Positions 1 to 35,672 of a DNA stretch of 64,000 bases are shown here, in pieces. This stretch comes from Oculina patagonica. Taxonomy: Eukaryota. Position 1 is the first letter of the stretch. Each line of letters starts with the position of its first letter. A program made the translations under genes and the position numbers. Location of the stretch: contig NC_135760.1 of NCBI RefSeq assembly GCF_052425735.1, positions 29,884,001 to 29,948,000 of the forward strand, read 5' to 3'. The notes beneath the pieces were generated by a model. The model did no database searches and was not told the origin of the DNA. It saw only the letters and a program-made list of their open reading frames with translations.

Positions 1-1743
1 TTTTTCTGCAAAGACTGTGCTGTTGCCATTTGCCATTCTTGTGTTGCAACAGTTCACGATGGTCACGCCAAGATACTTTTGGAACTGAGAAGCTGCAAAT
101 GAGCGCAAGACACAAGCCAAGTCTGTGATTGAATACCACAAGCAAAAAGCTCAGGAGAAGAGAAATGAGATTGCTCGACTTGATCTGAACTGTGCTGAAA
201 TTCAAGCGCAAGTCGCTAACGTGAAAAGAAGCGCTCAGCAGTTTGCTGAAAACATGATCGCCGCTATCGAAGCTCAGAAGCAGGAGATCTTTAATGACGT
301 GGAGGTTCGAGCGAGAGAATCAATCCAGCAACTGGAAACACAAAAGAGCGAAATTGAACAAAAAATGAAAACGACTGAGGCACAAATCGAGCAAACTGAA
401 GCTATTTTGAAACGAAACGTAAGCGCCGAAATCATGCAGCCAAACAAATTTCTAGACAAAACACCTCAGGAGGAAGTTGGAGAAGATGATCAAGCTCAGC
501 CTCCTTGTGTCAATGAAAGTATCCCCGAATTTAAATTCATAAAAAATGAAAAGTTGTTTAATAATGTAATGGCTGAGAAAATTGGCTTTTTCAAACAGTT
601 TCCAACCAAGACAAGACCACACCAGTCGAGTGTCGAAGGAAAAGGAATCAGTGACGTGACTGTTGGACTTGAAGCTCGGTTCGTTTTGACAACAAGAAAT
701 GCTGAAGGAGAACAATGTTACGACGACCGTGACCGCGTAGCAGTTGAAATCAAAAATCATCAAGGCCATGACTGTGCGACGAAAGCTCAAATCCAAGACA
801 GCAAAGATGGCACCTACAAGGTGAGATATTTTGCCAAAGAAAAAAAGGGGAAAAGGTAAATGAGGAGCATGTACATGGCAGTCCATTTGCTGTTAAAGTC
901 AAAGCCAAAACGTTCAGACCCGTGCTGTCTTTTGGAGAAAAGGGTTCAGCTGTTGGAATGCTTAGCGAGCCTTTTGGAGTCGCAGTTAACAATAATGATG
1001 AAATTGCAGTAACTGACTCTAAAAACAACAGAGTGCAGGTATTTAGTAGTGACGGGATTTTCTTAAGAACTTTTGGTACAAAGGGTGACAAGCAGGGGGA
1101 ATTTGATTATCCTGTGGGGATAGCTTTTGATAAGAACTCCGGAAATATCATAGTTCCGGACGCAAAAAACGGTCGAGTTCAACAGTTCAGTGGGCAGGGC
1201 GAGTACTTGAACCAGTTTGGTAGGGAGGGAAGTCTTGATCAACAGCTTAGGACTCCTTTTGGTTTATCTGTGCACAGTAATGGGAATTTTCTCGTTGCTG
1301 ATGCAGAAACCAAGCAAATTAAAATCTTTTCTCATACGGGTGAGTTTTTAGAAAAAATTGGCAAAGAGGGATCTTTCACCCTTCCCGATCACTGTATTGA
1401 GCATGATGAATATCTTATAGTGTCGGATAATGAAGAATATTGTATCAAATTTTTTGATGGGGAAGGAAATTTTCTTTACAAGTTTGGAAATAAGGGGGAA
1501 GGGAACGGGGATTTTGATTAACCTGGTTTTTTGTCGATTAACAAGGCAGGACACCTAATGGTCTGTGATACAGATAATCACAGAGTTCAAGTGTTTGAAC
1601 AAAATGGAAAGTTTATAAAAAAGTTTGGAACAAAGGGGAGCGAGTTAGGAGAGTTTGATGCCCCAGCCTCCTCGGCAGTTCTTAGTGATGGTAGGATAGT
1701 TGTATCGGACTGTGGTAATAACTGCATTAAGATATTTGAATAG
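1..1743 (+). pseudogene. TRIM-NHL (TRIM2/3/71-like) pseudogene, 5' part outside the window; B-box2, coiled coil, filamin and NHL remnants
   Basis: Collinear with 5687-7444 at an offset of about 5.7 kb. Lesions relative to the intact copy: a 4-nt insertion (ctga, ~85-88), a frameshifting deletion at ~841-855, and an in-frame TAA at 1519-1521 where the paralog has GGA. ORFs 125-859, 922-1521 and 1531-1743 are its fragments. Confidence 0.88.
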
Positions 1744-3035
1744 AATGTAACTGCACTTTAATATGAACTTGATATGATGTGAATCACTCATGCTGATGGT
1801 TTTTAAATTACGATATTGAAAACAGAAAGCAGGTTGTAAGCTGTAATGCAACCTTTGCCAAGCAAAGGAAACGCATCTAACCCAGGTCACTATTGGAATT
1901 TGGTCACACTCCGGATTGGTTGAAAAATCATTTTTTCCCTTGATTTTGTAGTCTATCGTTACACGATTTTCTTTTACCAATAATTAAGAGAACTTAGCAA
2001 ATACAAGACCAAAACTATCCAGTCATGATTGTTTACATCATTTAATTGAAAACCACCTTGAGACAGTTAAGTTCAAAGTGTTAAATTTGTACAACGGAAT
2101 TACTCAACACAATGTAGTCAATGTATAAACTGATCGATTTTGATGACGATGATTTCCGCTTTTTCTATTTGTTTGGTAGTTTTGTATTAAAGAAAAAACG
2201 TTTTGTGGAAGAGTAATGTTGGCCAAGAAGGTCTGGTCTCATAGTTAAACTTTCAGACTGCTATTATACGTGACTCTAATGTTGTATACATTAGGTACTC
2301 TTAAAGCTAGTTTATCAGGTTTATATAGAGTTCATATAGAAAAGTGCTACTTCAAATTGAATGCTTTAGTTTTAACCTGAAGGGTACATGGGGTAAAACT
2401 TCTACTTACAGCATTGTTGATCTCGGTAGACATTCCAAAATAATGTGTGTTATTATAACCCCACTTTTTAAACACGCCACTGCTGTTTGTGGTATGAACA
2501 CTGTAATTACACCAGAGAATATTTCCCTTGCTGTATTAACACAAGTAATTATTGCTTGAAAATCTATTCATAAATTTTGCAATTTTCCCAATGTGATTAT
2601 TGTATAACCTCTGCATTTGGCACTAATTTGCAAGCAAAGATTTAATCGAACGTTATTTCTTGTGATTGGACTGAAAATGGGAGGATAACGAATTGTTTGT
2701 GTGATTATTCTCAACTTTTGTCAGAAATGCGATAAATACGATTACGCTGGGAGTTTTTTGTACTCCCAAATTGCAATGTTTATATGTTTGATTGGTAACA
2801 GGAATTTGCAAGCATACTCGTGATTAACAGCAAACCACACTTTGTAGCACTTTCACTCTTATATATGATCATTACAAACCGATTTAAACTTCTATTTCCT
2901 TACCTCATTATATTTGAATTGTTATAACATACTATGTACTGAAATAAAGTAAAGTAGGTCTGGAGTGTGCTAACCTGAGATCATGCCCTCCCTCCCCACT
3001 TAAGAACGCCATTCAATCTAACGTGTAGATTGAAG

Positions 3036-3196
3036 AGGGTAGCAAAGGGTTTATACGTGACACGTGAAAAGGGCAAAAATTTGTCCGTGACGCGTGAAAA
3101 TAGGGTAAAAATTATACCGTGACGCGTGAAAATAGCTAGAAAAAATACGGGATTCGTGAATTCTGCTGTTTCAAGAAAGCGTGACGCGTGAATTTG

Positions 3197-3227
<31 letters not shown>

Positions 3228-3245
3228 CACCCCCTTTGCTACCCT
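3036..3245. mobile_element. MITE with AGGGTAGCAAAGGG terminal inverted repeats and internal (A)CGCGTGA repeats
   Basis: Inverted termini agggtagcaaaggg / ccctttgctaccct; flanks gattgaag / gattgaat resemble a TSD. Confidence 0.6.
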
Positions 3246-3404
3246 GATTGAATGGACGTTCTTTTAAGAAATAATTTTTTCCGTATTACATGTAATTTGA
3301 CTTTTTAAGTGAACATTGTAAAGTTATATGAAATGGTTGCTAATAAAAAGAAGAGAAGATACTTCACTTCTTGAATTGTTTTGTTTTAATGTTAGGAAAT
3401 TTAA

Positions 3405-3729
3405 GGTAGCTCTGAAACCGCTCCAGAATTTTTTTAACTTTGCAAAAAGTTGCAAGTATCTTATCATGCTGATCATTACTCAATAGTAAAAATGGGGGCT
3501 ACCGGGCTCGTTTTTGAGTTATAAGAACTTAAAGGGAAAATTAAAGGTGTTTTAAACAGGTTATACTGTTGCTACGGTAACCAGTGAGGTCATGAAAATG
3601 CCCACAACTTATTCAGCAATGATTGGAAATTTGTTTGATATCATTATTGTAGAAGCAACTTATAAAGATATAGCACTGACCCATCAAAGTATAAGAGCTG
3701 GGAAGTGCTGGAAACCGTTGTGAGCCTCC
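3405..3729. mobile_element. Non-autonomous DNA transposon with TTAA TSD and GG..CC termini (Kolobok-like)
   Basis: ttaa|ggtagctc...gagcctcc|ttaa with imperfect terminal inverted repeats. Confidence 0.65.
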
Positions 3730-4439
3730 TTAAAGAAAACTATTTGACATCAGATTCTGACATAAACACTACATTTCGCGCCCTTTTCAAAATAATGAAA
3801 CCACTGGTCTGTGAACTCAGTTATTAAAGCGACTTCTGTAGCTCTAGTTCGGACCGCCTTCAAGAAACCTAGTTTACATTATCAGTTAAATTTCCAATAA
3901 AAAGCTCACCTAGGCGACTATTTCCGTACGTAAGCGAGCGCAATTACCCTTGAGTTTTACGACTAGATTGGACTTTTCTCTGTTTTTAGCTCTTGTAAGC
4001 GACCATCCTTGAGAGACTGACTTGGCTGAGCAGGGGCGGATCCAGGGATTTTTTCATTGGGGGGTCCAAATTTTGATTCCGAAAACACTGTTGACACGTT
4101 TTTGCGGCAAATTACTTCTCCCCCACACCTCCTCATAATTCCTTGGCCCCCTATCTTGTACATGAATTTTACTCGCCAATATATTTATTGGCAAAGTCGT
4201 AACAGAAATTTTTAGCCAAAGCGCATTCAAACGGGTACACGTTTCATCGAGGTTTTATTGCATTGGTTGTTCATTTTCAGTAATTATCAGATTAATCAAC
4301 TTATCCATCAATAACACAGGCTGTATGGTTCAAATGCAGTCATACACTACTATTGTCTTCTCCAGTCCACACAGACACTTGCCCGGAACACTGAACCGTG
4401 GTTCTCACAAGAAATGGCTTCATGCTGCCTGCTACCAAT

Positions 4440-4830
4440 CCCAAGGGGGGTACTCCGGCTTGTTAATGACGGGGATGATCGAAGGATTTTTTTGGGTTTG
4501 AAATTTTCTTTTCCGGCATTTTTTTGGGTTGTAAAATTTGGCAAGTATTTTTTTGGGTATCTTGATTTAGATAGGAGATTTTTTTGGGTATTAAACACGA
4601 ACTAAAGTGCCTTGACGCATTTATGGTATGATGAATAAACAAAACGAGCGTTCTTTGTGTTATGTTATTGCACCTCCTGGCAATTTAGGGGTAAGAAGGG
4701 ATTTTTGGGGGTTATTTTTGGTTCAGGGATTTTTGGGTAATGTCGGAAGACTTAGGGATTTTTGGGTCCTGAGTTGCCTCCATTCGATCATCCCCGTCAT
4801 TTACAAGCCGGAGTACCCCCCCCCCCTGGG
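4440..4830. mobile_element. MITE with 8-bp TSD (hAT-like), ~350 bp upstream of the TRIM start codon
   Basis: Perfect TSD CTACCAAT at 4432-4439 and 4831-4838; TIRs cccaaggggggtactccgg / ccggagtaccccc..ctggg. A related copy lies at ~36241-36609. Confidence 0.8.
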
Positions 4831-21779: not shown

Positions 21780-24700
21780 ATGGAAAACTTAAACGACCAA
21801 ACTACAGCTAAAGAAGAAGAAGAAGTGTGTTATGAAATTGTTAGTAATATTCCGAAGGAATTTCGTTCCGCTGATTTGCGAGCAATGTTCTCAAACTTCA
21901 TCAATAATGGAACTGGGGGATTCAAGTGCTTCCATTTTCGACATCGGCCTGAGTTTAGACTTGAGACAGTCTCGAATGGCCAGGATAAACAGTCGTCCAC
22001 TACTACATGTTGTGTTATAATGATCTTCAAGAAAAAACTACAAGAGTTGATCAAGTGTTATCACGGCAAAAACTGGCTTGACCGCAGTGGAAAGTATTAC
22101 CCATCCAAAGCAGTCATATCAAAAATCAGAATTAAAGAAGGAAAAGGTTGTAACAGGGGGGGGGAGAAGGGGGGGGTGGGGTTCGTAATAAATAGCTTTT
22201 TCCTAACTTAATTAACTCACTCACTCATCCTCTTCGCCTTCGGAGAGGCAAAAGGGCTGCATTATCTGAGCAATTTGCGACTGAGTATCGTAAAAGACAA
22301 AATACAGTAGAAACCCGGTAACTCGAACTCGGATAACTCGAACTAATTTCCATTTCCCTTGGACCCACTTCAGGTCATTGGTACTCAGCTAACTCAAAAA
22401 CCCGCTAACTCAAACTGTTTTTTCGGTTCCCTTCAGAGTTCGAGTTACCAGGGTTCAACTGTAGTTAATTATAACTCTGGCCAATCTCAAAGGGCATGTA
22501 CTAAAACGACTGAAATGAAACCGCTGAAACGAACAAAATCACTGAAACAAGCAAAATCCATCACCATTATTGCGAGATAACCATAAACAGGCTAACCCAA
22601 GTGTCATTCATGCTAACCGGAGTGCATGGTGCACTCCGGTTAGCATGAATAGTACTCTCGTCAGCCTATTTAACATTAGCTCTCAATAACTGTAATGGGT
22701 TTTTTTTGTTTCGGTAATTTTGTTTCGTTTTGCTCTTATCAGCTGTTTTGATTGTTTTGTTTCTTTGTTTGGGTTCTAGTACATGCCATCACAAAGGACA
22801 CAGACATTCTAATGAACATATCAAAACTCAAACAAAATACATGCATTCAGTGTGAAGTGCAGGAAAACATATGTGAGCGAGTCGCGATTGGTTTTAGTTT
22901 ACATCCGATTGGATATGAAAAAACCAACAACAGAACTTTGATGTTTTAGTCAATCACATAGCATAAGTGAAGCAAAACCAGAGCTGGTTCCGGTTCAAGT
23001 TTACTTTTACACTCAATATTGAAAATAGTAAACAACTAGCCCAAGTGCACTGTTGAGTTGCCAAAAGCATGTGGGAATTTTCAGAACACAGGAGAAGTGC
23101 ATACTGCAGAGCAGGAGTCAAAGCAAATGGTTTTCATACTTCTTAAGTGTTCTTACAAATTCGTAAGTTCACTATGTCCCAGTTAAAAAATGCTAAACAA
23201 ATTGCCTGCAGTCAAACTTGTGATGTAGGCCACTTGTACTATATCTTGACAATGCAAAAGCATGATGTGGGCCACATGATTTATCAAGCTATAATGAACT
23301 AAAACTAACCAAACATGGCACTTGCAATTCCTTGAACATGCATTTTATCATGCATGGATATGTTACAGTAGATCCAAGGTTTGTGGGGCAGGATATACAG
23401 ATGACCTGATGCTTTGGTTTTGCTCCAGTACACACTGTCTACAACATTGGTCTACAGCCAATCTCACAATTAATTAGACACAGAATCAGAATCAATCACA
23501 CTTTCCCACACTTGGTGCTGGTTATGTGTTTTTGTTTCAATTTCTTGTGTTTCTTGTGATTGGCCACTTTAATTACCACAATAAAGTGAAAACCACTATA
23601 TGTCATTATCATTGACTACTTATTTCATGATCTGGTCATGCTGGGTATTATAGTTATAAGACATCTTCTTTGAAATTAGTTTGTAGTAACTGTAACATTT
23701 CCTCTCCTTCTTATAGACCTTCCCTACAGAACAAGGCAAGAAAAAAGTCAGCAGTCTTCCACAAGAACAAACTTAGAGTTCTCACAGCAAGACCTTAATG
23801 AACTGATTGAGCTCCGTCCTCCTCCGCTGATGCCAAATGGTAATGTTGGAACACCTCTGTCTGTATTCATGGAGTTGATAAGAACTTGCAAGCTCCCTCC
23901 ACATGTAATCAAAAAACTTGACTTGGATTTTTCTGTGGGAAAGTCCAAAAAGAAATATAGTAATGTTCCACTTGATTACAAGTCATTGGAAAAAAGAGTT
24001 TCTGCTGCCGCTACAAAAAGAAATAAAAGAAAACTAGTTTCTCAATCAGTGAAAGACTTAAAGCAAGGTGTGTCAGAAACAAGTGACTCTTCGTCATCTA
24101 CATGTGGTTTGGAAACTGAAGAGCCCCAAAGGACCGAGCAGTATGGCAGTGAAAATAGTTCGGACGGTGAAGAAATCAACAAGATTGAAGTTGATGGTGA
24201 TGATGATAGTGAAGCTGAGGAATGGGACAGACATGAATCATTGCACAATGATGTTACAAGTCAAGAACGAACAAAAGAAAGACTATTTGAAGAGGACATT
24301 GAACTGAAGTGGGAGAAAGGAGGTAGTGGTCTTGTGTTTTATACTGATGCAGCATTCTGGAAAGAACAGGAAGAACCAAATTTTGATGAAGAGACTGCTG
24401 ATGATTGGGATGTCGACATGGAAATATATGAAAATCCAGGTATGGCAGAAACATCAAGTTTTGATATTTAATATCGAATCAGTAACACAATGCTGTTGGT
24501 TGTGATGACAAGTGGGGGGTTTATTTTAATAGATTTTGAAAAGAGTCAATGGGAGGTTCCACATATTGCAGAGTTTTCAGAAAGTGCTTGTTAGTAGACA
24601 TTCCAGAAATTTAATGTGTCAAACATGAGAGACCTGTGTTTGATCACATTTCCAAACACTGAGAAAAGAGTTGAAAATGTGACACATAGCATGGTATCTT

Positions 24701-25286
24701 TGACGAAATTTGAGTTGTTTGGAAATGCGATAAAACACAGCTTTAAGAGTTTGATGCATCTTCTCAACTGGGACAAAAATTACGGAGTTAGTGTAAAATG
24801 AAATTCTGAAAATCTATGCTAATTATGATTTATCTTTCACATTCAGATGGAGGGGACAAAGATTCTCGAGATCTTCTTCAGATGCGAGTAGAAAAGCAGT
24901 GGAGAAAAGGAAATGATATTGACCTGAATAAAATTGGAGGCTTTGAAAAACATACAAGAGCATTTGGAGGCCAACTGATGAGGAAGCAAGGTTGGAAGGA
25001 AGGGGGGAGCCTTGGCTCAACACAGGAGGGAATAACAGAACCTGTGGTTGCCGAAGGACAATTGCCCAAATGTAAGAGAGGTTTAGGTTACTATGGTGAC
25101 AAGTTACAACGACATGTGAAACGACCCAAGGCTGAAAGAAATGTTATTATATCAACGGTTTATGATGAACCAGACAACAATGAAGAAAATGTGTTTGAAT
25201 CATGGGGACCTGATAAACTTAAGTATGTAAACAATGTTGATTTTGTACGTGGAAAATCTCACCCTGAACAAAGCAGAAAAATATGA
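21780..25286 (+). CDS. GPATCH3: G-patch domain-containing protein 3, 509 aa; exons 21780-22146, 23717-24439, 24847-25286
   Basis: Family motifs VSNIP..RSADLR..F.CFHFRHRPE, LMPNGNVGTP, EEWDRHESLH, IELKWEKGGSGLVFYTDA, DDWDVDM and a G-patch (FEKHTRAFGGQLMRKQGWKEGGSLG..RGLGY). Phase-1 GT-AG introns; 1530 nt in frame. Confidence 0.95.
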
Positions 25287-25792: not shown

Positions 25793-25943
25793 TTTCGATA
25801 TATTAAAATTCAGCCTAAAACAATAGACCTCGGGACGAGGCTCCGGGGACCAAACTATAGAGTTTGTGGGGTTTATTCCCCGGAGCCTCGTAGTGATGTC
25901 TATTGTTTTAGGCTGAATTTTAAAATATCGAAATTGGGCTATT
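25793..25943. mobile_element. Short palindromic MITE; related copy at ~27350-27516
   Basis: aatagcccaatttcgatat..cagcctaaaacaatagac is mirrored by gtctattgttttaggctg..atatcgaaattgggctatt. Confidence 0.7.
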
Positions 25944-26811
25944 CCAGGGCAGTAATAAAATAGAGTCATCTGGGTGGGAATGAGGCAGCAAAAGTCATGT
26001 AAAAATTAAAATAAGCATTTAAATTTTACACTTGTACATAGCGATTCATAGAAGAGAAGAACTATCAACAACAATTTCTAAATTCTTGAAGTTTTCACAA
26101 TTAACAAGCTAAAGGAAAACTTAGGTAAATATATGTTGTAGACATTGCTAACAGTACAGTGCCTTTCAGTAACTTATGGTTTCTTTTTGTGCTGCCATGG
26201 GTCTTGTTTGTTGTCCTATTGAATTAGGATTTTCAGTTAAGTTTTGAATTTCATTGTTAACTTTGCACATTGTTAAAAGGCTCTGTGATTAAAATGTTTG
26301 AGTCTGGAAGGAAACTCTCAAAAGTACTTGTACGTTTTGAAAACTGTCTTGCAAGTATTGAATAATATTGTTACACATTGTACAATGTATTGTACTGCAC
26401 ACATGAAAAAGTTTCAAAGAATATTTTAAAGATAACGACGAATTTAAACAAATAATTACATTTTCACACCAATTACCGTTTTCCTTGTCACAGTCAATGA
26501 CCATTGTCAAAAACTCAAATCCTAAAATCATAATGATTTTAGTGGTTATTCTGAATCAAATGCCTACTTTTTATCCTGAAAGCTTTGCAGGCATTCATCT
26601 GCTTACACCCTAGTATTTTCAAATTACTCGAGAGAGAGCTTCATTTTATGTAAATTGTATACTAGTTACCCTGCGAATCTCAGCTACAATGTGAGTCATT
26701 TCATTCTAGATCTGCTAGAGTCATTCAAAAACAATAAATTAAATTAATGCTATACCCAGTTTATTATTAGTCCACATTGTCAAAGAAAATGAAGATTGAT
26801 TAGTCGGAAAA

Positions 26812-29800
26812 TTATTGCTTTGCTTCCCACACAGTGCAGGGAAAACCTTCAGCTCGCTTTAAATCTCTTGAATACCTCTGACTCAATCTATCAAAGCCAT
26901 CTGCAATGTCATTTGCAAGTTGTCTTGTCTGGTGTCGTTGTTGCCGTCCACTGTCATCCGTTCTTTCTGCGTCATTCCATAACATAAATGTCTCCAGATC
27001 AGAAGCCAGTTTAAACAGTGCTTCACGGTTAGCTCTGACTTGCTTAACTCTTTCTTGTTGTCTGTGCTGTAAGTGGGGGAAATAAAATTATTGGTTAAAA
27101 AAGAAGAACGTTTAGAGCTGGATTTGATTGGATGATAAAGTAAAGAATTTGTATAAAACTTTAGGATTTGCCTTTACTAAATTCAGCTATTCCAATTAAC
27201 AGCTACATCAACTGAAAATACTTGTTTCTGTCATTATTTATGTATGTCTTGAAACCTAATGACAGAAACAAGTATTTTCAGTTGATGTAGCTGTTAATTG
27301 GAATTGCTGAATTTAGCTCTGTATAGTGATACAAGTGTAACATAATACCAATAGGCCAATTCCGATATATTAAAATTCTAATTTGGCTCCGAGGCTTGGG
27401 GGAATAAAACAAAAGAAATTATTTATTCATCCCTGAACCTCAATGTGATATCTTTTGTTTTATTCCCCCAAGCCTGGAATCCAAGTTAGAATTTTAATAT
27501 ATCGAAAATGGCCTATTAACATTGATTATTATGTTACACTTGTATACAGAGCAAAATGCTACGGGTGGTAACTTCATTGTAACAGACCCTTAAAAACTCA
27601 ATGATAGCCCTGGCTTAGTTATCCAATTTTACTACACCACAGGAGCAATTTCGTACTACACAGTTATTTTATTTTAATACATTATACTCACAGCTTGGTG
27701 ACTCAAGACTTACATTTCTTCTTTCTGCAGCCTTTCTTAGTTTCTCATCTAATTCTTCAGCTGTTAGTTTACTTTTCTCTTTTTTTTTGTATGGCACTTG
27801 TAATGCTTTGGGAATGGGAGATACAGGCTGTTTGTCGTCATCAAAGCCAACAGTAAATGCAACACTCCTGTTGTTGTCGTTCTTAATGAGAGATTTTGCC
27901 GAGCTACATGTAGTGTGGTTTTCCTTCTGGCATGTAGGCTTGACTTGCCTTTGGCACCCTTTTGACGAGTTGTTGTTTTTGTCATCCACAGCAAAATCTT
28001 TTGTCATTTGAGATGTCAAGGTTCTAAAATCTTTTGCAACATGACGAGCTGTAGTCAGTAGTTCAGAAGATGTCATTTTAGGTGTGTTGTGATTCTCTCC
28101 TCTGCCAACATCCATAAGGGATTTCTGCTGTAGGAGGAGTTCAACGTTGTGTGCAAGCTTTCTAGCAGCTTCTTGTCGATCATGGATTCTTTTCAGTCTC
28201 TGCTCCACATGTTGCTGTGTAAGCAAGTTACATTCATTTGATAAATAATATTACATGTACACCTACTCACATTTCCTTATAGGCTTATGTGGCTCACATG
28301 GCTTGGCATGCATGGCAGTAGTGTTTTATTTCAAACTAGTTTGACTATGTTACAGAATTACTTATTAATAAGTGTCTTGACAGGACTTTTTTTGAGCTAA
28401 AAATGCCTTTTCAAAAGGCGACATTTCAAAGAGTTTAACCATTCTTCTTCAGATTGTCATTAGCAAGATGGCAGACTGATAGCCTGAAGAAGAGTAAATT
28501 CAAAATGTCGCCTTTTAAAAAGACATTTTTTAACCTCAAAAAAGTTACGTCAAGATGCAAAATAATTTTAAATTTTGTTTGCATCAGGGCCATGGTTGAC
28601 ACCAACCAAAGGAGACCTACTACTTTTCAGACAAACTATTAAATTATTGAATTTTTTATTAATGTCTAGCTAGCCTGCGTCAAGGACAGTCTACACTACC
28701 AGTAAAGGACCTTATTGATCATTAATTTGCTGCACCGCAGGTTATAACATTTCTAACATGTACACTACATGCATGTCATCTTGCAGTAACTCACTTTCTT
28801 TCTTCTTTCAGCCATTTTTTGTTTCTCTGTGAGCCTCTCAATGCTGATGTTTTCTCTTTCTGACTTGACCTGGTCACAGAACCGTTTTGGAGGTGGCCTG
28901 CAGACTGGTTGTTCAATGGGAATGTGGAAGGCCACAGCATTGGTAGCCTTACTTGTCATTAATGCATTTTTACAGCCATTTGAATCTGTGGTTGAATTAG
29001 TGGTCTCTGTTGTATATTCACTGGGATCTGGTTCTTTTCGTTTTGCTTTGTCCTTTTCATCACTGGTTTGTCTGTTAATCTGGCAAGTGTCCTGCCCAGT
29101 CGTCTCTTTTTTTCTTTCATTCCCATTCTGAAAATGCATTATCACAGATGTTCATGCTAGAACTCGTTCACCTTTCATAGTATCCCTGATTGAATTAACT
29201 CATTCAATCTTTTGTATAAGAGATTCCTAATCAGATTCCAGCTAAGAGGGGAAAAATAGACTGTACGGGCAGTTATGTGAGTTTCATGCATGAAGCGATC
29301 ATTAGACAGTGCTGTTAAAGGTCCACAGTCGGAATATGATCGGAATATGCGTAGAATTAGTTTTCGTGCCTGCACTTGGTAACAAGCTCAGATCTTTTGT
29401 TGAGGAGAGTAGATCTGTCAGCTGATAGTATGCAGAACTTCTCTGTCAGACACAGTGCTATATCTAGCTATGTAATTTTATTGTAGTGTCTCTGGTCATT
29501 GCCCTGTTTTGCATTGCACATCCTTACTGCGCAGAATTTTACACGTAATTAGCGCGCGCACATAAACAAGATGGCAGCTTTTTTCTATGCGGCTTAGTCA
29601 GCGAGAGAAGCAAATAAATATCGTTGCTTTTTCGTAAATGAGTATGGTGACCTATCATTGTTTTCTCATATTTTGGGTCTAGCGATCAAATTCTTTCTGT
29701 AAAATGAAAACAGATCAATTCCTATATTTGAATATAAAATAATCGCTAAAAACATGTACTTTGCCAGTGCTCTCAGAGGAATTATAGAGGAATTATATGG

Positions 29801-30724
29801 AATATACAAGGTCTTCCTGCTCCTAAACGAATATGGTGACCCCCTTTTTTATTTCAAAATTTAAGTTTCCTTATGGTATTGCACACAACATCATCCTTAT
29901 ATTATTTTTCTGCTTAAATAATATTTCAGATGTCATTTGCAAGGGATGTTAACATAGTAAAACAAAAGAAACCTGTTTACTTGAGTTATCATTAACCTGG
30001 GCGTATCACATTGAACGTCTGATTTCGATTTTGTTTGATTTGAGACCCCAGGCATTAAAGCAGCTTTAGGTTTGGTTAGAAATAAGGAATTGCAAGAAAA
30101 AGTAACAAAAAAAATCTTTAATAATAGGCATTAATTCCTAAACGGAAGTCATTACTGAAAAAATGAGGCATTGTGCACTCTAGCTGACAATGTATTTTTG
30201 TATTTTCTGGTGAAGTTGTATGATTCTATACCTCTGAGTCTTTAAGCTGGTCTTTACAAGCCACATTTATTTAATACCGAAAACATGAACGGTATGACCT
30301 AATTTATAATTCATAAGTCATTTCTAAAAATAAGTCATAGTTTCTCTGAAGTTGCTGAAGTATGCAGAAACTCCAATTAGTTATACCTTGACCCTTGGAA
30401 AATAATATTAAAAAGAGCTTTTTTACATGCCGAAACTGAAAAAGAAACATCAATTTAAGAATTCTTAGATGTAATCTTATGCTTGATCATGATTTAGGAC
30501 TGAGGGAAAACCTATTGCAATTATCCTGCAACCAATTTGAAAGAGAGCTAACCCACTATAAAAGGTTTCTTCACATTCTGCACCTTTTTTTGAAAATTCC
30601 TACCTCCTCTCCTTCCAAAGTAAAACCTTGGATCTCTCGCAACCCTTCTCTTCTGAGCACAGGAGAAGTTTTAGGAGCAAGATCCGTTAAGCTATTATCG
30701 AAAGGAACCACCTTCACTTACCAT
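26812..30724 (-). CDS. Uncharacterised protein with two tandem stathmin-like modules, ~363 aa; exons 30724-30722 (ATG only, tentative), 29127-28795, 28214-27714, 27066-26812
   Basis: Three large phase-0 exons with canonical GT/AG join into one ORF. Repeat 1: AVAFHIPI..RPPPKR..ISIERLTEKQKMAERRKK|QHVEQRLKRI. Repeat 2: SVAFTVGF..SPIPKAL..LTAEELDEKLRKAAERRN|HRQQERVKQV. The first exon is inferred from ATG|GTAAGT. Confidence 0.75.
27177..27316. repeat. ~60-bp-arm near-perfect hairpin in the last intron of the stathmin-like gene
   Basis: ctaaattcagc..ttgtttctgtcatta and taatgacagaaacaag..gctgaatttag are reverse complements separated by ~17 nt. Confidence 0.8.
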
Positions 30725-31091
30725 CTTCGTTGATCCTTCGCGTTGTCGAAAAAGCGATTCGACAAAGCAGTAGCTAAAGGATTTTTCAATTTAAGCCTGG
30801 GAACTTTATGCAACGTTAAAATACCGAATGCCGCCTTAAATTACGAGCTTTGAGTAATGGAAAACTATGCTGAATTCTGCAAAAATATTCGCTGTGTCCA
30901 AAACAAATTCTGGTTGTGATGTTTACATATGGAATACTGTCATCTGATTGGCTGGTTGGAATGCCGACGGATAACCTCGTTCCTAATCTCGTTCCCAGAT
31001 CTCGCGCGAGATCTGGTGGGAATGAGGCAACCTCATGAACATGGAAACGAGGCTATTGTAAGACAATGGCAAGCAAGATGGCGGACGAACA
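30725..31091. promoter_or_regulatory. Bidirectional promoter region between the stathmin-like gene and MTFP1
   Basis: Head-to-head starts ~370 bp apart; reverse CCAAT (gattgg ~30946), 22-bp palindrome CCAGATCTCGCGCGAGATCTGG (30995-31016), YY1-like CAAGATGGCGG (31074-31084). Confidence 0.55.
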
Positions 31092-34000
31092 ATGGTAGAA
31101 CGGGTTGAACAACAAGATTTTTCCGATAATATCAAGGGATCTGACGTCGATGTTTTCAGGGATACAGCGTTAAGATACCTAGGTGAGCACTGAATTTATT
31201 GCAAGATCATCATGTTAATTGTGAGACCAGCAGTTGATCCCTTCTTCAAAATACATGTCCAATATGCGTTTGCTCAGATGTTTATACTTTCACAGATGTG
31301 AAATGCTGTCAGAGTGTTCATTACTTTGGCCCTAAAGTATCTTTTCTTGCAGCCTGCTATACTTTTCTAATCAGTTTGCTTAAAACTTAAACCTCACTCA
31401 GAGAGATCAGAGTAGAAAGAGATTCTTTTGAGGAAAATTAAAGGTGGCACCTCTACATTGTACATTTTTATTGTGTGGACACTTTGCTGAAAATGTTATC
31501 TTGTGAAATATATTGTGGACTTAAAAGCAAGCGCAATCAAAAGAAGTAATAAGGTTTATTTTTGACAGCTGTTGCCATTGCCATGGCAACCATTTCCGCA
31601 AACAATTTGAGTGCATATTTTCGATAATTCCCTAGGTGCCACCCCCTAGCTGCTGTGATGCTACCCATGTGGTATTCTTGTATGCACAAGCCCCGCTCCC
31701 AAAATAAGCCCACTTTAAAGTGTTGTTGTGCAAATATAAGTCAAGGCTTAATTTCAGAATTTTATGGTTTCTATTTGTGTTATAATTGCTATGTTGACAC
31801 AAGAAATCAGAAGGCAATTTCCATGACTGGATGGCAATGCCTGCCTGCATCTGGCAAACTAAATACCCATAATTTTACAATAAATTATTCTACTCTTTCC
31901 AGTAGACTGTGACACTCAAGAGTATTGGGCTATCTTTAGAGCAGTGTCCATAAAACTGTTTCAAAACTACTCAGCTGCTAAATTTTAAACTGAAAACATT
32001 GGGAAAAAGGGACAGATGAGGACATCTAAGAGAGTCCAATCCTTTAGAATGTGACATCTCCACAATTTGTATCTTAAACTTGCCCAGATGACTAATCTAG
32101 ACATATATGGTTCACAAAAATCTGGTGCTCTGCATCTTTCTAAGCCCGTCATGGACTGTGAAACTAAGTATTACTGACAGTCATTCCCTGTTAGCATTTT
32201 GGCTAAATAAAGTGCTTTAGAATGCCAATGTTGATGGCCTGATGGGAATTGTTGAATATAAGACATTGTTTAAAAAGATTAAAGAAAGGCACCTGTTAGG
32301 AACACAAGAGCGCTGAACACTTCTGACTTTATCCATTTGAAAAAGTTATTTTCTGTTTCCACTTTTTGCCTATTTTAAAGTTGTTCCTTTGAAGAACTTC
32401 AAGTATTTCACATTTTTTTAAAGACAGAGACTGGTATAATTAAATTTACACTAAAAAGTTTCACCTGTTTTACTGGATTAACACATATATGACCCTCATT
32501 GACCCTTGTTGACCCTTGTCAAGAGCAAAGCAGGAACTTCTTTTAAATTAAATTGGACCAAGATCTGGATGGTGTGTCAGGTTGTGTTTGTGTAGCAGAG
32601 CGTTCTAAGTGATCTTGATGCTTTGACTCTTTCTCTTAAGCAGTCATGGATGACGACTTTTTCTACTTAGGAGCAGTGAAGGATGGAATCCTCCGTGTAA
32701 ATAAAGTCAACCAACTGTATATGAACAGGGTGTTTAATACGTTGCGACACTTGAGCAAATAGGAGTAAAAAGTTCACTTACCTTCATGTTAACAGGTGCC
32801 TGCCATTTTTGTAGCAGCCTTTGAACAAGCTATTTCCACTGAATATTCATTTAAATTTAGTGTTTCTTCGCAGTAGCCAACTCTAGCAGCTCCCCATCCA
32901 GCGCTAAAAGTTTGTTATCATTCCTGTGTTATCAAGTAAGACTGGTTTACTCTGTTGTTCGCTGGTTTCCTGTGTCTGTGATCATTAACCACAGCAAGAA
33001 CAGGCATTTTGTAAAAACAATTTGCTCATGCATAGCAGCAAGGGGTTGGCACCCAAAACAAGTCAAGTGTTTGACATGGTCTTGTAACAGGTGTTTGTTT
33101 TTAACTATCACACAACAACCACTCATTTAGATAATGACAGTGTTAAGTGCTACCCATTGCCACAAGAAAGGAAAACCTGGGTTATGACACATAAATACTT
33201 AATAGTTTACTTGTATTAAAAATACATAGTTTGTAAACAATTAAGTCTTTTTTATATTTTAAACTTCCCTGACTGTTAGAAACTTTGACGTTAATCAAAG
33301 GACTGTTTTATAAATGTATTAGTGCTGTAAGGGTTATTTTGTGCTTTTGTGAAGCTTTAAATCATTGTCAATGATGTTTTTCCTACTTAACACTTATTAA
33401 GCTGTCTTGGCTGATAGCTTTATTTAGCAGACCTTTTGATGTAGACACCTGCTAAATCAGTGAACCATTAACCATTTTCTTTTTCTGTCACTGGTTAACT
33501 TATTGGAGCATGAAATGACAAAACTTTTAATTTTTACCTTTTGAGTAAATAAGTAGATTTAATTTAGACAGGAAGACAAGCTTTTTGACCTGGTACTGAT
33601 GCGATGCGACCTTTAAAAAAAAGCACAGGAGCAGTCCTTTAAGTGTAAAAAACACAACCCTTTTTTCAGCCTTAAGAAGTGTGACAAATTAAAATACTTA
33701 TTGGGTGGTAATTCAATAGCCGTGACCATGACCTGAAAATCAGAAATAAGGAGACATTGATTCCAGTTTACATCATGTAGGTTTTTGCAAAGATACTTTG
33801 ATGCAAATTAAAAAAATCTTTTGGACATTTTTTTCCACTGATTTTCTTTCTTAGATTTAAAATTATAGATATGTGCTAAATGCCAGATAATTTTTTAAGG
33901 ACTCTTTTAGCTCCCACTCCATGAAATAATACTAGATAGGACATTTTCTCTACTCTCCCCTGCCTGCTTACTGTATTCTCTTTCTTTGGCTTGATCCATA

Positions 34001-35672
34001 AACTTGCCAAAATTTCAATTTTTCCTTAATGAATACAGACCTTCCACTTGCCCAGCTGCATTCAACTACAACATTTCAACAGGGATTAGTCAAAGAAAGT
34101 CTGGGGAAATTTGTGGAGAATGAAATTTTTTGTTTACTCCACAGTTTTCCATCAAAATGTTCCCGACAACAAAGCCTGTAGGATTAATTTGGCCTATAGT
34201 GCCTAAATTAGAAGATAATAATTTTCCCAGTTTAGCTATAAGGAGGCAGGAAAGTAAACAATGTTTTTGAAATACCTGAAAACCAGAAACAAGATTTGGT
34301 TCAGGAGTTTTTTTAATGCAGCTTAAATGAGAAAAATTTTCCTTCCACAGTTTCTTTCTTCAATTGTTCAACTTGTATTTCCATTGGCAAATAAATGTTT
34401 CATTCATATAACATGCAATGTGATGAATAGTGAAATTAATATAGTTTCACCAAGTGACATTTCTTTTCATTTCTGATTTCTTCATAATCATTGCCTCAAA
34501 ATTATCTCACCAATCCTGATTCAATTAAATTTAATGAAGGTGTGTTTATTTCCAACAGGGTATGCTAATGAATTTGGTGAGGCATTTCGTACCCACATCC
34601 CTCGGTTGATGTACTTAGGTAGTTATGGGGTTGCCTCAACATACTGCCTGGCAGACTCCATCGACAAAGGGAAGCGCTGCTACCAGGAAAGTAGCCATTT
34701 GTCAAGTTATCTTCAGAAACGGAAAGCTGTTGAAACCATGGTAGAGGCAGCTGTCTGGCAGGGGCTGGCGTCAGTGATTATCCCAGGCTTCACAATCAAC
34801 AGGATTTGTGCTGCATCCAGGTTCACGCTCAAGAGATGTGCAAGAACAATGCCTCCTCATGCTCAGATGTGGGTGACAACACTTGTGGGATTGAGTGCAA
34901 TACCTGTTATTATCAAACCCATTGATAGGTATGTGACATCAAATAAGTGAATTTTATTATGGTGACAATAGAAAATATGTTACTCAGTCTCTTAGTACTA
35001 AAATTGGGCTCAAACCCAGACCTCTTAATCATTATCCACTGCAAATAAGATACTGGTACTCAATGTGACAGTCACATGATAAATACATGTAAATAAAATA
35101 ATAAATAAATGCAGTAGCATATCCACTGAGTGGCTCTTAATACAATGTTTTCAAATCCAAATTGGAAATTACAAGTGTTGGTTTTTGTGGTGGTAGGAAA
35201 ACCATAGAACCAGGAGGAAAAACCCACGGAGCAAGGACAAGAACTAACAACAAGCTCAAAAATTAATGATGATGTCTGGGTTTTGACCCGAGCCCAGGCC
35301 ACATTGGTGGGGGTGATCGCTTTCACCACTGCTCCATCCCAGCACCAACATAACACTACTGATTTATTATTACAAGTTTTCAAAAAGAATTATTTTCAGT
35401 TTTCTTGACAGTATGTTGTACCAATGTATGGAGCAGTATGTCGTATGCTGTTGAGTCTGTGTAGGGTAACTGGAATAATGTGGGGTTGACATACTGTAAG
35501 TCACTTTTTATTTTTTTGTTTTAAAAATAAGCAAGAACTACGTTATTATTTTTTCTCACAAATTTTCTTTTTTTCTTTTCTTAGATTGGTTGATAACATG
35601 ATGGATGGGATGATTCACATTTCAAGGCATCTTGGCATCTCTCATCAACTTGATCACAGCCACAAGAAATAG
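31092..35672 (+). CDS. MTFP1: Mitochondrial fission process protein 1 (MTP18), 182 aa; exons 31092-31182, 34559-34928, 35585-35672
   Basis: DVFRDTALRYLG|YANEFGEAFR, SYGVASTYCLADSIDKG, WQGLASVIIPGFTINR, GLSAIPVIIKPIDR|LVD. GT-AG introns; 549 nt in frame. Confidence 0.95.
35150..35344 (-). mobile_element. Degenerate tRNA-derived SINE in MTFP1 intron 2
   Basis: Minus strand begins gctgggatggagcagtggtgaaagcg (A-box-like), with a body containing tcttgtccttgctccgtgggtttttc. Confidence 0.55.

What the first reader, a model, noticed from the sequence alone, without database searches (positions are those of the whole stretch)
26812..30724. Hidden four-exon gene encoding a tandem double stathmin-like protein
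Seen: ORF-track fragments splice into one ~363-aa ORF with two homologous modules. Each has a VAF(H/T)(I/V) strand, a Pro/Lys-rich linker, a (I/L)(S/T)xExLxEK..AERR helix and a second helix (TARHVAKDFRTLT..KDF / LANDIADGFDRLS..RDL). Each module is split by a phase-0 intron right after ERRKK / ERRN. Known: stathmin reads [33 protein letters not shown]|S, with a phase-0 intron after that Lys as I recall it. Inference: an exon-level internal duplication made a two-headed tubulin-sequestering or microtubule-regulating protein, unlike canonical single-domain stathmins or STMND1.
Basis: partly seen in the sequence, partly recalled or inferred. Interest (0 to 1): 0.75.

Follow-up and report, generated by a model that had tools for sequence, protein, structure and literature searches.

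The report
Two-module stathmin-like coral gene
This is a real, spliced and transcribed gene of the stony coral Oculina patagonica. Its 363-residue protein carries two copies of the front half of a stathmin (tubulin-binding) domain, an arrangement shared with other stony corals and a sea anemone but never studied; tubulin binding is not shown.

Summary
The spliced 363-aa product is identical to NCBI's [quoted passage not shown], so the gene is annotated, not hidden.

The two halves are homologous (z = 13 against shuffles). The whole protein passes Pfam Stathmin (27.6 bits, cut-off 24.7) with one match per module. The likeness covers only the first coding exon of each module: cap strand, Pro/basic linker and helix start up to ERRK. 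The part after each intron is family-specific, a continued helix, a loop and a second helix.

The phase-0 intron after ERRK is also found in:
- both modules of this gene and of its Nematostella orthologue;
- this genome's canonical stathmin and a second stathmin-like locus;
- single-module homologues of a hemichordate and a snail.

Two-module orthologues occur in Porites, Acropora, Montipora and, in conserved synteny, Nematostella. A module tree dates the duplication before the coral/anemone split.

Tubulin binding is inferred and untested. Verdict: a new variant of the stathmin family, of moderate interest. The scan holds no earlier stathmin finding in this genome.

The parts
30722..30884 (-). 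Exon 1: 5'UTR ending in the start codon ATG (30724-30722). The 5' limit is the furthest contig coverage, not a mapped transcription start.
   Evidence: Contig X4 record 12 covers 30722-30884 and the joint 29127|30722 is present. It is the only ATG in the exon. The donor reads ATG|GTAAGT.
29128..30721 (-). Intron 1 (1594 nt, GT..AG). It holds a high-copy repeat at about 29496-29863.
   Evidence: The joint skips 1594 nt in X1 and X4. Depth is 346-4446 in the bins covering 29496-29863.
28795..29127 (-). Exon 2: residues 2-112. It encodes the disordered N-terminus and the first half of module 1.
   Evidence: Model pLDDT is below 50 for residues 1-62.
28795..28953 (-). Module 1, stathmin-like half (residues 60-112): cap motif NAVAFHIPI, linker RPPPKRF, and helix start ISIERLTEKQKMAERRKK.
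   Evidence: Pfam Stathmin scores 16.1 bits on residues 66-133, profile positions 15-80. hhalign to the first SLD exons of the paralogues gives 94% probability.
28215..28794 (-). Intron 2 (580 nt, phase 0), directly after ERRKK.
   Evidence: Joint 28214|28795 in X1, X4 and X9.
27714..28214 (-). Exon 3: residues 113-279. It encodes the second half of module 1, a spacer, and the first half of module 2.
27975..28214 (-). Module 1, family-specific half (residues 113-192): continuation of helix 1 (signature RLKRIHDRQEAARKLA), a loop, and helix 2 (SSELLTTARHVAKDFRTLT).
   Evidence: These are invariant columns across corals and Nematostella. Helices are predicted at residues 97-147 and 161-191. The module model has pLDDT 80. 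There is no likeness to the canonical stathmin helix exon.
27714..27878 (-). Module 2, stathmin-like half (residues 225-279): cap RSVAFTVGF, linker SPIPKAL..KKKEKSK, and helix start LTAEELDEKLRKAAERRN.
   Evidence: Pfam Stathmin scores 24.1 bits alone, on residues 231-295, profile positions 16-75. Smith-Waterman against the L006 exon gives z = 7.5.
27067..27713 (-). Intron 3 (647 nt, phase 0), directly after ERRN. It holds two hairpin (MITE-like) inverted repeats.
   Evidence: Joint 27066|27714 in X1, X4 and X9. Inverted repeats lie at 27177-27316 and 27350-27517.
26812..27066 (-). Exon 4, coding part: residues 280-363 plus the stop codon. It encodes the family-specific half of module 2: helix continuation, loop, and helix 2 (QLANDIADGFDRLSQRY).
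   Evidence: Helices are predicted at residues 264-312 and 319-351.
25903..26811 (-). 3'UTR of at least about 900 nt. The limit is where the contigs end, not a mapped poly-A site.
   Evidence: Contigs run unbroken from 27066 to 26000 and up to 97 nt further. AATAAA occurs at 26765 and 25877.

Best explanation
Shown: LOC144647475 of Oculina patagonica is an expressed four-exon gene for a 363-aa protein. After a disordered N-terminus it has two homologous modules of about 135 residues. Each module starts with the conserved front of a stathmin-like domain: a cap strand, a Pro/basic linker and the start of the helix up to ERRK, all encoded before a phase-0 intron. Each then continues with a family-specific second exon part: more helix, a loop and a second helix. 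The ancestral unit is a two-exon, single-module gene of about 145 aa, still found in hemichordates, a brachiopod and a snail. It was duplicated head to tail and fused before sea anemones and stony corals split. Inferred: each module's cap, linker and first helix binds one alpha/beta-tubulin dimer, as the same part of stathmin/RB3 and of STMND1 does. The protein would then hold two capped tubulin dimers at once and act as a soluble-tubulin binder or sensor, not as a classical head-to-tail T2S sequesterer. The post-intron helices would form helical hairpins, which may pack the two modules together.
For: Gene and splicing: exact joints in contigs of three studies, and identity to NCBI protein P0028. 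Duplication: E 2e-12 and z = 13. The 20-module alignment is collinear. Stathmin homology: P0028 scores 27.6 bits against PF00836, above the 24.7 cut-off, with one stretch per module. The single-module homologues score 25-39 bits. Ten of 20 modules hit Stathmin at E <= 0.01 and no other family recurs. The family profile finds RB3/Stathmin-4 chains in the PDB at E 0.012. hhalign to the first SLD exons of this genome's canonical stathmin and of its second stathmin-like locus gives 94% probability, E about 1e-7. Shared phase-0 intron after (E)RRK: both modules here; both paralogues in this genome; Ptychodera and Batillaria single-module genes; and, within about 2 residues, both modules of Nematostella. 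Age and orthology: module-1 and module-2 clades each have 100/98 support and each contains the Nematostella module. The MTP18 and G-patch neighbours are the same in Nematostella and in the window. Selection: long invariant runs in both helices between corals and Nematostella. Plausibility of tubulin binding: STMND1's short SLD binds tubulin with a KD of 0.4-0.6 uM (PMC11238091). An engineered 'Stathmin-like domain R1' chain of 87 residues stands in the PDB as entry 4F6R; that it is a cap plus one repeat crystallised with one tubulin is my recollection, not a tool result.
Against: The stathmin likeness is remote: module 1 alone scores only 16 bits, and the PDB profile hit at E 0.012 ranks behind designed coiled coils. 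It stops about 15-20 residues after ERRK. The rest of each module has no likeness to the stathmin helix and is predicted to break into two helices, unlike stathmin's single helix. The most conserved residues (RIHxRQEAARKLA and helix 2) lie outside the stathmin-like part, so the main selected interface may serve another partner. Structure searches gave no significant match.
Confidence: 0.55

Rival explanations
1. The family descends from stathmin but has been repurposed. The cap and linker are a relic, or bind weakly. The strongly conserved post-intron helices form helical hairpins that bind another partner, or build a four-helix bundle that acts as a scaffold. On this reading tubulin is not the main ligand.
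For: The longest invariant runs lie after the intron, outside the stathmin-like part. Each module is predicted as helix-loop-helix. The nearest, non-significant fold matches are two-helix hairpins that form bundles: Med11/22, histidine-kinase DHp and uL29. A co-fold of the helical parts of module 1 and module 2 gave weak support. The median score was 0.37 against a best control of 0.05. The runs agree in at least 62% of contacts and the partner's pLDDT is at least 64. That mark was reached by 51 of 78 solved complexes and 2 of 108 mismatched pairs. At 0.60 or under, it was reached by only 5 of the 78 solved complexes and by all 4 mismatches that passed.
Against: The cap motif, the proline in the linker and the EK..A..R core are also invariant or nearly so across 20 modules, from corals to hemichordates and molluscs. 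That argues the stathmin-like front is still under selection. The co-fold support is weak by the tool's own calibration.
Confidence: 0.3
2. The stathmin likeness is a chance product of a charged, Lys/Glu/Arg-rich helix, and the family is unrelated to stathmin.
For: Single exons gave no Pfam Stathmin hit and no PDB hit. In the PDB, designed coiled coils outrank stathmin for the family profile.
Against: The match is collinear over three different elements: strand motif, proline linker and helix start. It ends at an identical phase-0 intron in three paralogous genes of one genome and in bilaterian homologues. Pfam's own cut-off is passed by the window protein, two coral orthologues and four single-module homologues.
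Confidence: 0.04
3. The model is an artefact, either a pseudogene or a chimeric prediction, and no such protein is made.
For: The three contig runs are only guessed to be RNA. No proteomic evidence was available.
Against: Intron-less joined contigs occur in three studies at depths of 55-178, and reads occur in a declared RNA run. The frame is open and conserved, with orthologues in synteny as far as Nematostella.
Confidence: 0.02

Closest known systems
Canonical stathmins (STMN1-4; RB3 stathmin-like domain in tubulin T2R crystal structures, e.g. PDB 1SA0, 4I4T)
   Same: They share the cap strand motif, the Pro/basic linker and the helix start ..EE(L/I)xEKLxAAEERRK. They share a phase-0 intron directly after that Lys. 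The window protein passes the Pfam PF00836 cut-off.
   Different: Only profile positions about 15-80 of 136 are matched. There is no second tubulin-binding repeat and no continuous helix of about 95 residues. Two complete cap-plus-helix units sit in one chain. The Ser after ERRK is absent here (ERRKKQ and ERRNH); that it is a stathmin phosphorylation site (Ser63) is from my memory. This genome has its own canonical stathmin elsewhere, at C3:13.12 Mb.
STMND1 (stathmin domain containing 1; Deng et al. 2024, PMC11238091)
   Same: Both are ancient, non-neuronal-type stathmin relatives with a short SLD. Both have a PPxRL-type basic linker. Module 2 is most like this genome's second stathmin-like exon, which has a basic, NLS-like linker as STMND1 has (z = 7.5; hhalign 94%). 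Whether that locus is the STMND1 orthologue was not established.
   Different: There is no N-terminal MGCGPSQ lipidation motif; the protein starts MNGNE. It has two modules instead of one. It has a family-specific second helix. It is a separate locus from the second stathmin-like gene at C3:18.11 Mb.
Engineered single-repeat SLD 'R1' (PDB 4F6R)
   Same: As I recall the design, R1 is a cap, a linker and a helix of about 40-50 residues, which is what the front of each module looks like. The family profile aligns to the R1 chain at positions 38-77.
   Different: R1 is an artificial construct. Here the unit is natural, is followed by a loop and a second helix, and occurs twice in tandem. The 1:1 tubulin stoichiometry of R1 is from my memory of the literature, not from a tool result.
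Single-module homologues of about 145 aa: Ptychodera XP_070542868, Saccoglossus XP_002739069, Lingula XP_013379648, Batillaria BaRGS_00002792
   Same: They have the same module from end to end, including helix 2 and the intron after ERRK. They pass Pfam Stathmin at 25-39 bits.
   Different: They have one module, not two. They are uncharacterised or misnamed in databases, for example 'eIF3 subunit A-like'.

Membership tests
Stathmin family (Pfam PF00836, stathmin-like domain) | Whole-protein score above Pfam's gathering cut-off | tested here: met
   P0028, identical to the window product, scores 27.6 bits and E 3.3e-6 against a cut-off of 24.7, in two stretches. Module 2 alone scores 24.1 bits and module 1 alone 16.1 bits.
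Stathmin family (Pfam PF00836, stathmin-like domain) | N-terminal cap strand motif, Pro/basic linker, and helix start ending in AEERRK, in that order | tested here: met
   Present in both modules. F9, P22, K44, A48 and R51 are invariant over 20 modules. hhalign to two bona fide first SLD exons of this genome gives 94% probability, E about 1e-7.
Stathmin family (Pfam PF00836, stathmin-like domain) | Phase-0 intron directly after the ERRK lysine | tested here: met
   RNA joints lie after ERRKK and ERRN. The same position holds in this genome's canonical stathmin and second stathmin-like exon. It also holds in Ptychodera and Batillaria and, to within about 2 residues, in Nematostella.
Stathmin family (Pfam PF00836, stathmin-like domain) | One continuous long helix carrying a second tubulin-binding repeat (profile positions about 85-136) | tested here: not met
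   Pfam matches stop at profile position 75-84. hhalign against the canonical second exon gives 2% probability. The models show helix-loop-helix.
Stathmin family (Pfam PF00836, stathmin-like domain) | Binds alpha/beta-tubulin heterodimers | not testable with these tools
No co-fold was run.
STMND1 subfamily | N-terminal dual lipidation motif MGCGPSQ (PMC11238091) | tested here: not met
   The product starts MNGNERKK. Orthologues start MKNGN or carry other extensions. The motif is as given.
STMND1 subfamily | Basic nuclear localisation signal inside the SLD linker (consensus PLRKPPARLKKLKIKKEV) | tested here: inconclusive
   The module 2 linker has PKALQVPYKKKEKSK and the module 1 linker has PPPKRF without a basic run. 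No NLS predictor was run.
STMND1 subfamily | Single SLD in a protein of about 280 aa | tested here: not met
   The protein has two modules in 363 aa.

The most novel reading that the evidence does not exclude
This would be a third ancient branch of the stathmin superfamily, beside STMN1-4 and STMND1: a half stathmin-like domain followed by a helical hairpin. Single-module members would pair through the hairpin. In hexacorals the two protomers were fused into one chain, a pseudo-dimer. It would present two independently capped tubulin-binding heads and so carry or sense two tubulin dimers in a geometry unlike the head-to-tail T2S complex.
Probability: 0.2. Interest if true: 0.65.

Novelty: new variant of a known kind. 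Interest (0 to 1): 0.45.

Why it matters
Stathmins are the textbook soluble-tubulin binders, and the recently described STMND1 tied the oldest branch to cilia and tubulin sensing. This gene reveals a further unstudied lineage that keeps only the cap and first-helix half of the domain. That half is joined to a strongly conserved helix-loop-helix. The whole unit has stayed doubled since before sea anemones and stony corals diverged. If both heads bind tubulin, this is a natural bivalent version of the engineered one-tubulin stathmin scaffolds, and a handle on how early animals buffered or sensed tubulin. If they do not, it is a clear case of a stathmin front end recruited to another job. Nematostella carries the orthologue in conserved synteny, so the question can be tested in a laboratory model.

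Tried and rejected
- **Single exons:** Pfam on the three coding exons one by one gave no Stathmin hit. phmmer of exons 2 and 3 against PDB sequences found nothing at E <= 10. The intron splits the domain, so only the spliced protein or whole modules score.
- **Structure searches:** Foldseek of the full model against the PDB, and of the module model against the PDB and Swiss-Prot AFDB, gave no match at E <= 0.001. The rows were generic helical hairpins. Mouse STMND1 appeared at rank 3 with a non-significant E of 0.71.
- **Wider homologue search:** A profile search with the module alignment in the 5.8-billion-protein set returned mostly coral exon fragments and no new taxa. A search with the snail protein returned only itself.
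- **Tubulin co-fold:** not run. PF00091 hits in this genome are exon fragments, the only long open frame is a divergent non-alpha/beta tubulin, and the best alpha and beta exons lack about 125 and at least 56 N-terminal residues. Spliced tubulins have no reference, so I did not type them in.
- **Nematostella isoform X2:** it has no gene on record in the contig index, so isoform X1 was used instead.
- **Literature:** the supplement of the STMND1 paper is not held. No paper mentions the accessions of the orthologues. No paper describes tandem stathmin-like domains in invertebrates.
- **Spurious Pfam hits:** weak hits to GSG1-like, Med22 and DUF4527 are below their cut-offs, not shared among orthologues, and were discarded.
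- **N-terminal extension:** the Porites-type extension aligns weakly to read-through of intron 1 here, but that frame is closed by TAA and has no ATG, so it was not added to the model.
Full report
**1. The gene.**

- Laying public runs on 26000-31500 showed contigs from three studies (X1, X4, X9) that skip exactly 27067-27713 and 28215-28794.
- X1 and X4 also skip 29128-30721. All skipped stretches end CT..AC on the + strand.
- Depth over the exons is 55-178 and near zero over the introns, apart from two repeat islands.
- These runs are only guessed to be RNA, but intron-less joined contigs are what RNA gives. A declared poly-A RNA run (X23) also has reads in exons 2-3.
- Exon 1 reaches at least 30884, and its only ATG is the one that ends it.
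- The 3'UTR runs at least about 900 nt beyond the stop.
- The product is letter for letter P0028, NCBI's [quoted passage not shown]. The window is therefore from that stony coral, and the gene is annotated but unnamed.

**2. The duplication.**
- Residues 1-200 against 201-363 align collinearly over 152 positions at 49 bits, E 2e-12.
- The local alignment score is 120 against 38 +/- 6.3 for 2000 shuffles, z = 13.
- Both copies carry, in order: a VAF strand motif, a proline/basic linker, a helix starting (S/T)xExLxEK..AERR, a phase-0 intron, more helix, a loop and a second helix.
- AlphaFold2 predicts helices at 97-147 and 161-191 (module 1) and at 264-312 and 319-351 (module 2). The N-terminus, the caps and the spacer are disordered.
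- A module-only model reaches pLDDT 80 and pTM 0.55.

**3. Relation to stathmin.**
Single exons score nothing because the intron cuts the domain. Whole proteins and whole modules do score:

- The spliced protein passes Pfam Stathmin at 27.6 bits against a cut-off of 24.7, with one stretch in each module. The matches cover profile positions about 15-80 of 136.
- Single-module homologues of about 145 aa pass at 25-39 bits.
- Ten of 20 modules hit Stathmin at E <= 0.01, and no other family recurs.
- The family profile finds RB3/Stathmin-4 chains in the PDB at E 0.012, behind designed coiled coils.

The sharper test came from this genome's own stathmin genes. One is a canonical stathmin at C3:13.12 Mb. 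The other is a second stathmin-like locus at C3:18.11 Mb whose linker has a basic, NLS-like run, as STMND1 has.

- hhalign of the module family against their first SLD exons gives 94% probability, E 8e-8 and 1e-7. Both alignments end at the same profile column, the last residue before the intron.
- Those exons are followed by GT (..EKRRK|GTAGGT and ..DDRRK|GTAATA). The canonical gene resumes after cag with SIEGELL.
- By contrast, the post-intron half of the module shows no likeness to the canonical helix exon (2% probability).

Each module is therefore a stathmin first exon joined to a family-specific second exon.

**4. Relatives and age.**
- An exhaustive HMMER search with exon 3 found only 25 relatives among 1.84 billion representatives.
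- Full-length two-module orthologues exist in Porites, Acropora and Montipora. They also exist in Nematostella vectensis, where the protein is misnamed "leucine-rich repeat and IQ domain-containing protein 1".
- Single-module proteins occur in Ptychodera, Saccoglossus, Lingula and Batillaria.
- In a maximum-likelihood tree of 20 modules, the module-1 and module-2 groups are each one branch with 100/98 support, and each includes the Nematostella module. The duplication therefore predates the Actiniaria/Scleractinia split.
- The Nematostella gene lies between an MTP18 gene and a G-patch gene. The window has the same neighbours: MTP18/MTFP1-type exons at 31079-31183 and 34534-34950, and a G-patch-like gene at 23830-25286.
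- The Nematostella exon borders fall, within about 2 residues, after ERRKK and ERRD.
- The Ptychodera and Batillaria genes have two coding exons split exactly after ERRK, phase 0.
- The simplest history is a tandem duplication of a two-exon gene, followed by fusion of the last exon of copy 1 with the first exon of copy 2. That fused exon is today's exon 3.

**5. Mechanism.**
What is shown is the architecture, its expression and its conservation. What is inferred is tubulin binding.

- The conserved front (cap, linker and about 50 residues of helix) corresponds to the part of RB3/stathmin that caps alpha-tubulin and runs along the first tubulin dimer. That correspondence is from my knowledge of the T2R structures.
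- An engineered construct of this kind, "Stathmin-like domain R1", is in the PDB as 4F6R.
- STMND1's short SLD binds tubulin at a KD of 0.4-0.6 uM (PMC11238091).
- On that analogy each module could hold one capped dimer. Two capped heads cannot form stathmin's head-to-tail T2S complex, so the protein would be a bivalent binder or sensor.
- Against this, the most invariant residues (RIHxRQEAARKLA and helix 2) lie outside the stathmin-like part. The main selected surface may therefore serve another partner or self-association.

I tested self-association once, with a co-fold of the helical parts of module 1 and module 2.

- It gave weak support: a median score of 0.37 (three runs: 0.71, 0.37, 0.04) against a best control of 0.05.
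- The runs agree in at least 62% of contacts, and the partner's pLDDT is at least 64.
- The mark was reached by 51 of 78 solved complexes and 2 of 108 mismatched pairs.
- At 0.60 or under, it was reached by only 5 of the 78 solved complexes and by all 4 mismatches that passed.
- This is a lead, not a finding.

A co-fold with tubulin could not be run, because no whole alpha- or beta-tubulin is available by reference.

**6. Comparison and novelty.**
- The protein meets the Pfam criterion, the motif order and the intron mark of the stathmin family.
- It fails the long-helix, second-repeat feature.
- It lacks STMND1's lipidation motif and is a separate locus from both other stathmin-type genes of this genome.
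- I found no paper on it or on tandem stathmin-like domains.
- It is best filed as a new variant of a known kind: an unstudied stathmin-related lineage, doubled in hexacorals.
- Interest is moderate. The finding is solid and the architecture unusual, but the gene is already annotated, a Pfam Stathmin hit for it is already precomputed in the protein collection searched, and its function remains inference.

Noticed in passing
G000:C3:13124035-13126587 (loci L003, L001): This coral's canonical stathmin has its helix in one exon of 238 residues that matches the Pfam Stathmin helix region (positions about 60-135) four times over (five overlapping stretches listed). That is about twice the repeat number of vertebrate stathmin, so it may bind more than two tubulin dimers.
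   Followed up: partly
G000:C3:18110743-18110925 (locus L006): This is a second stathmin-type exon, ..GGMAFDVML..RRPQHLRKLERRKKK..EEKLRNADDRRK|GT. Its basic, NLS-like linker resembles that of STMND1. The rest of the gene, including any N-terminal lipidation exon, was not found in 23 kb around it.
   Followed up: partly
window 30722-31183: The stathmin-like gene (minus strand, exon 1 up to at least 30884) and an MTP18/MTFP1-type gene (plus strand, first exon about 31079-31183, spliced to 34534-34950) start head to head about 200 bp apart. This is probably a bidirectional promoter. The same gene order, MTP18 / this gene / G-patch gene, holds in Nematostella (locus L020).
   Followed up: partly
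window 27177-27316 and 27350-27517 (intron 3); 29496-29863 (intron 1): Intron 3 holds two near-perfect hairpin inverted repeats, with arms of 60 nt (98% complementary) and 70 nt (90%). The bins over the second hairpin and over 29496-29863 in intron 1 show contig depths of 200-4400, against 55-180 on the exons. They are high-copy, MITE-like elements transcribed elsewhere in the genome.
   Followed up: partly
window 27780 (exon 3, lysine run in the module 2 linker): Contigs of runs X1 and X4 lack 3 bases here, an in-frame loss of one Lys in PYKKKEKSK. Run X9 agrees with the window. Other single-base differences are listed. This is probably allelic or between-population variation.
   Followed up: no
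locus L020:4991-5155 (Nematostella isoform X1, protein P0039 residues 1-55): The longer Nematostella isoform adds an N-terminal exon with a third cap-like motif, GGIEFEMNLDD..KRNPFKSRRF, but no helix. No counterpart was found in the Oculina window by tblastn.
   Followed up: partly
database names of homologues: Automatic names are misleading. The Nematostella orthologue is called 'leucine-rich repeat and IQ domain-containing protein 1'. The Saccoglossus single-module protein is called 'eukaryotic translation initiation factor 3 subunit A-like'.
   Followed up: no
window 30183-30751: Low-depth contigs (3-11, against 55-134 on the exons) cover part of intron 1 next to exon 1. They are either unspliced precursor or an alternative longer first exon, possibly NCBI's isoform X1. 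The frame that resembles the Porites N-terminal extension is closed by TAA here.
   Followed up: partly
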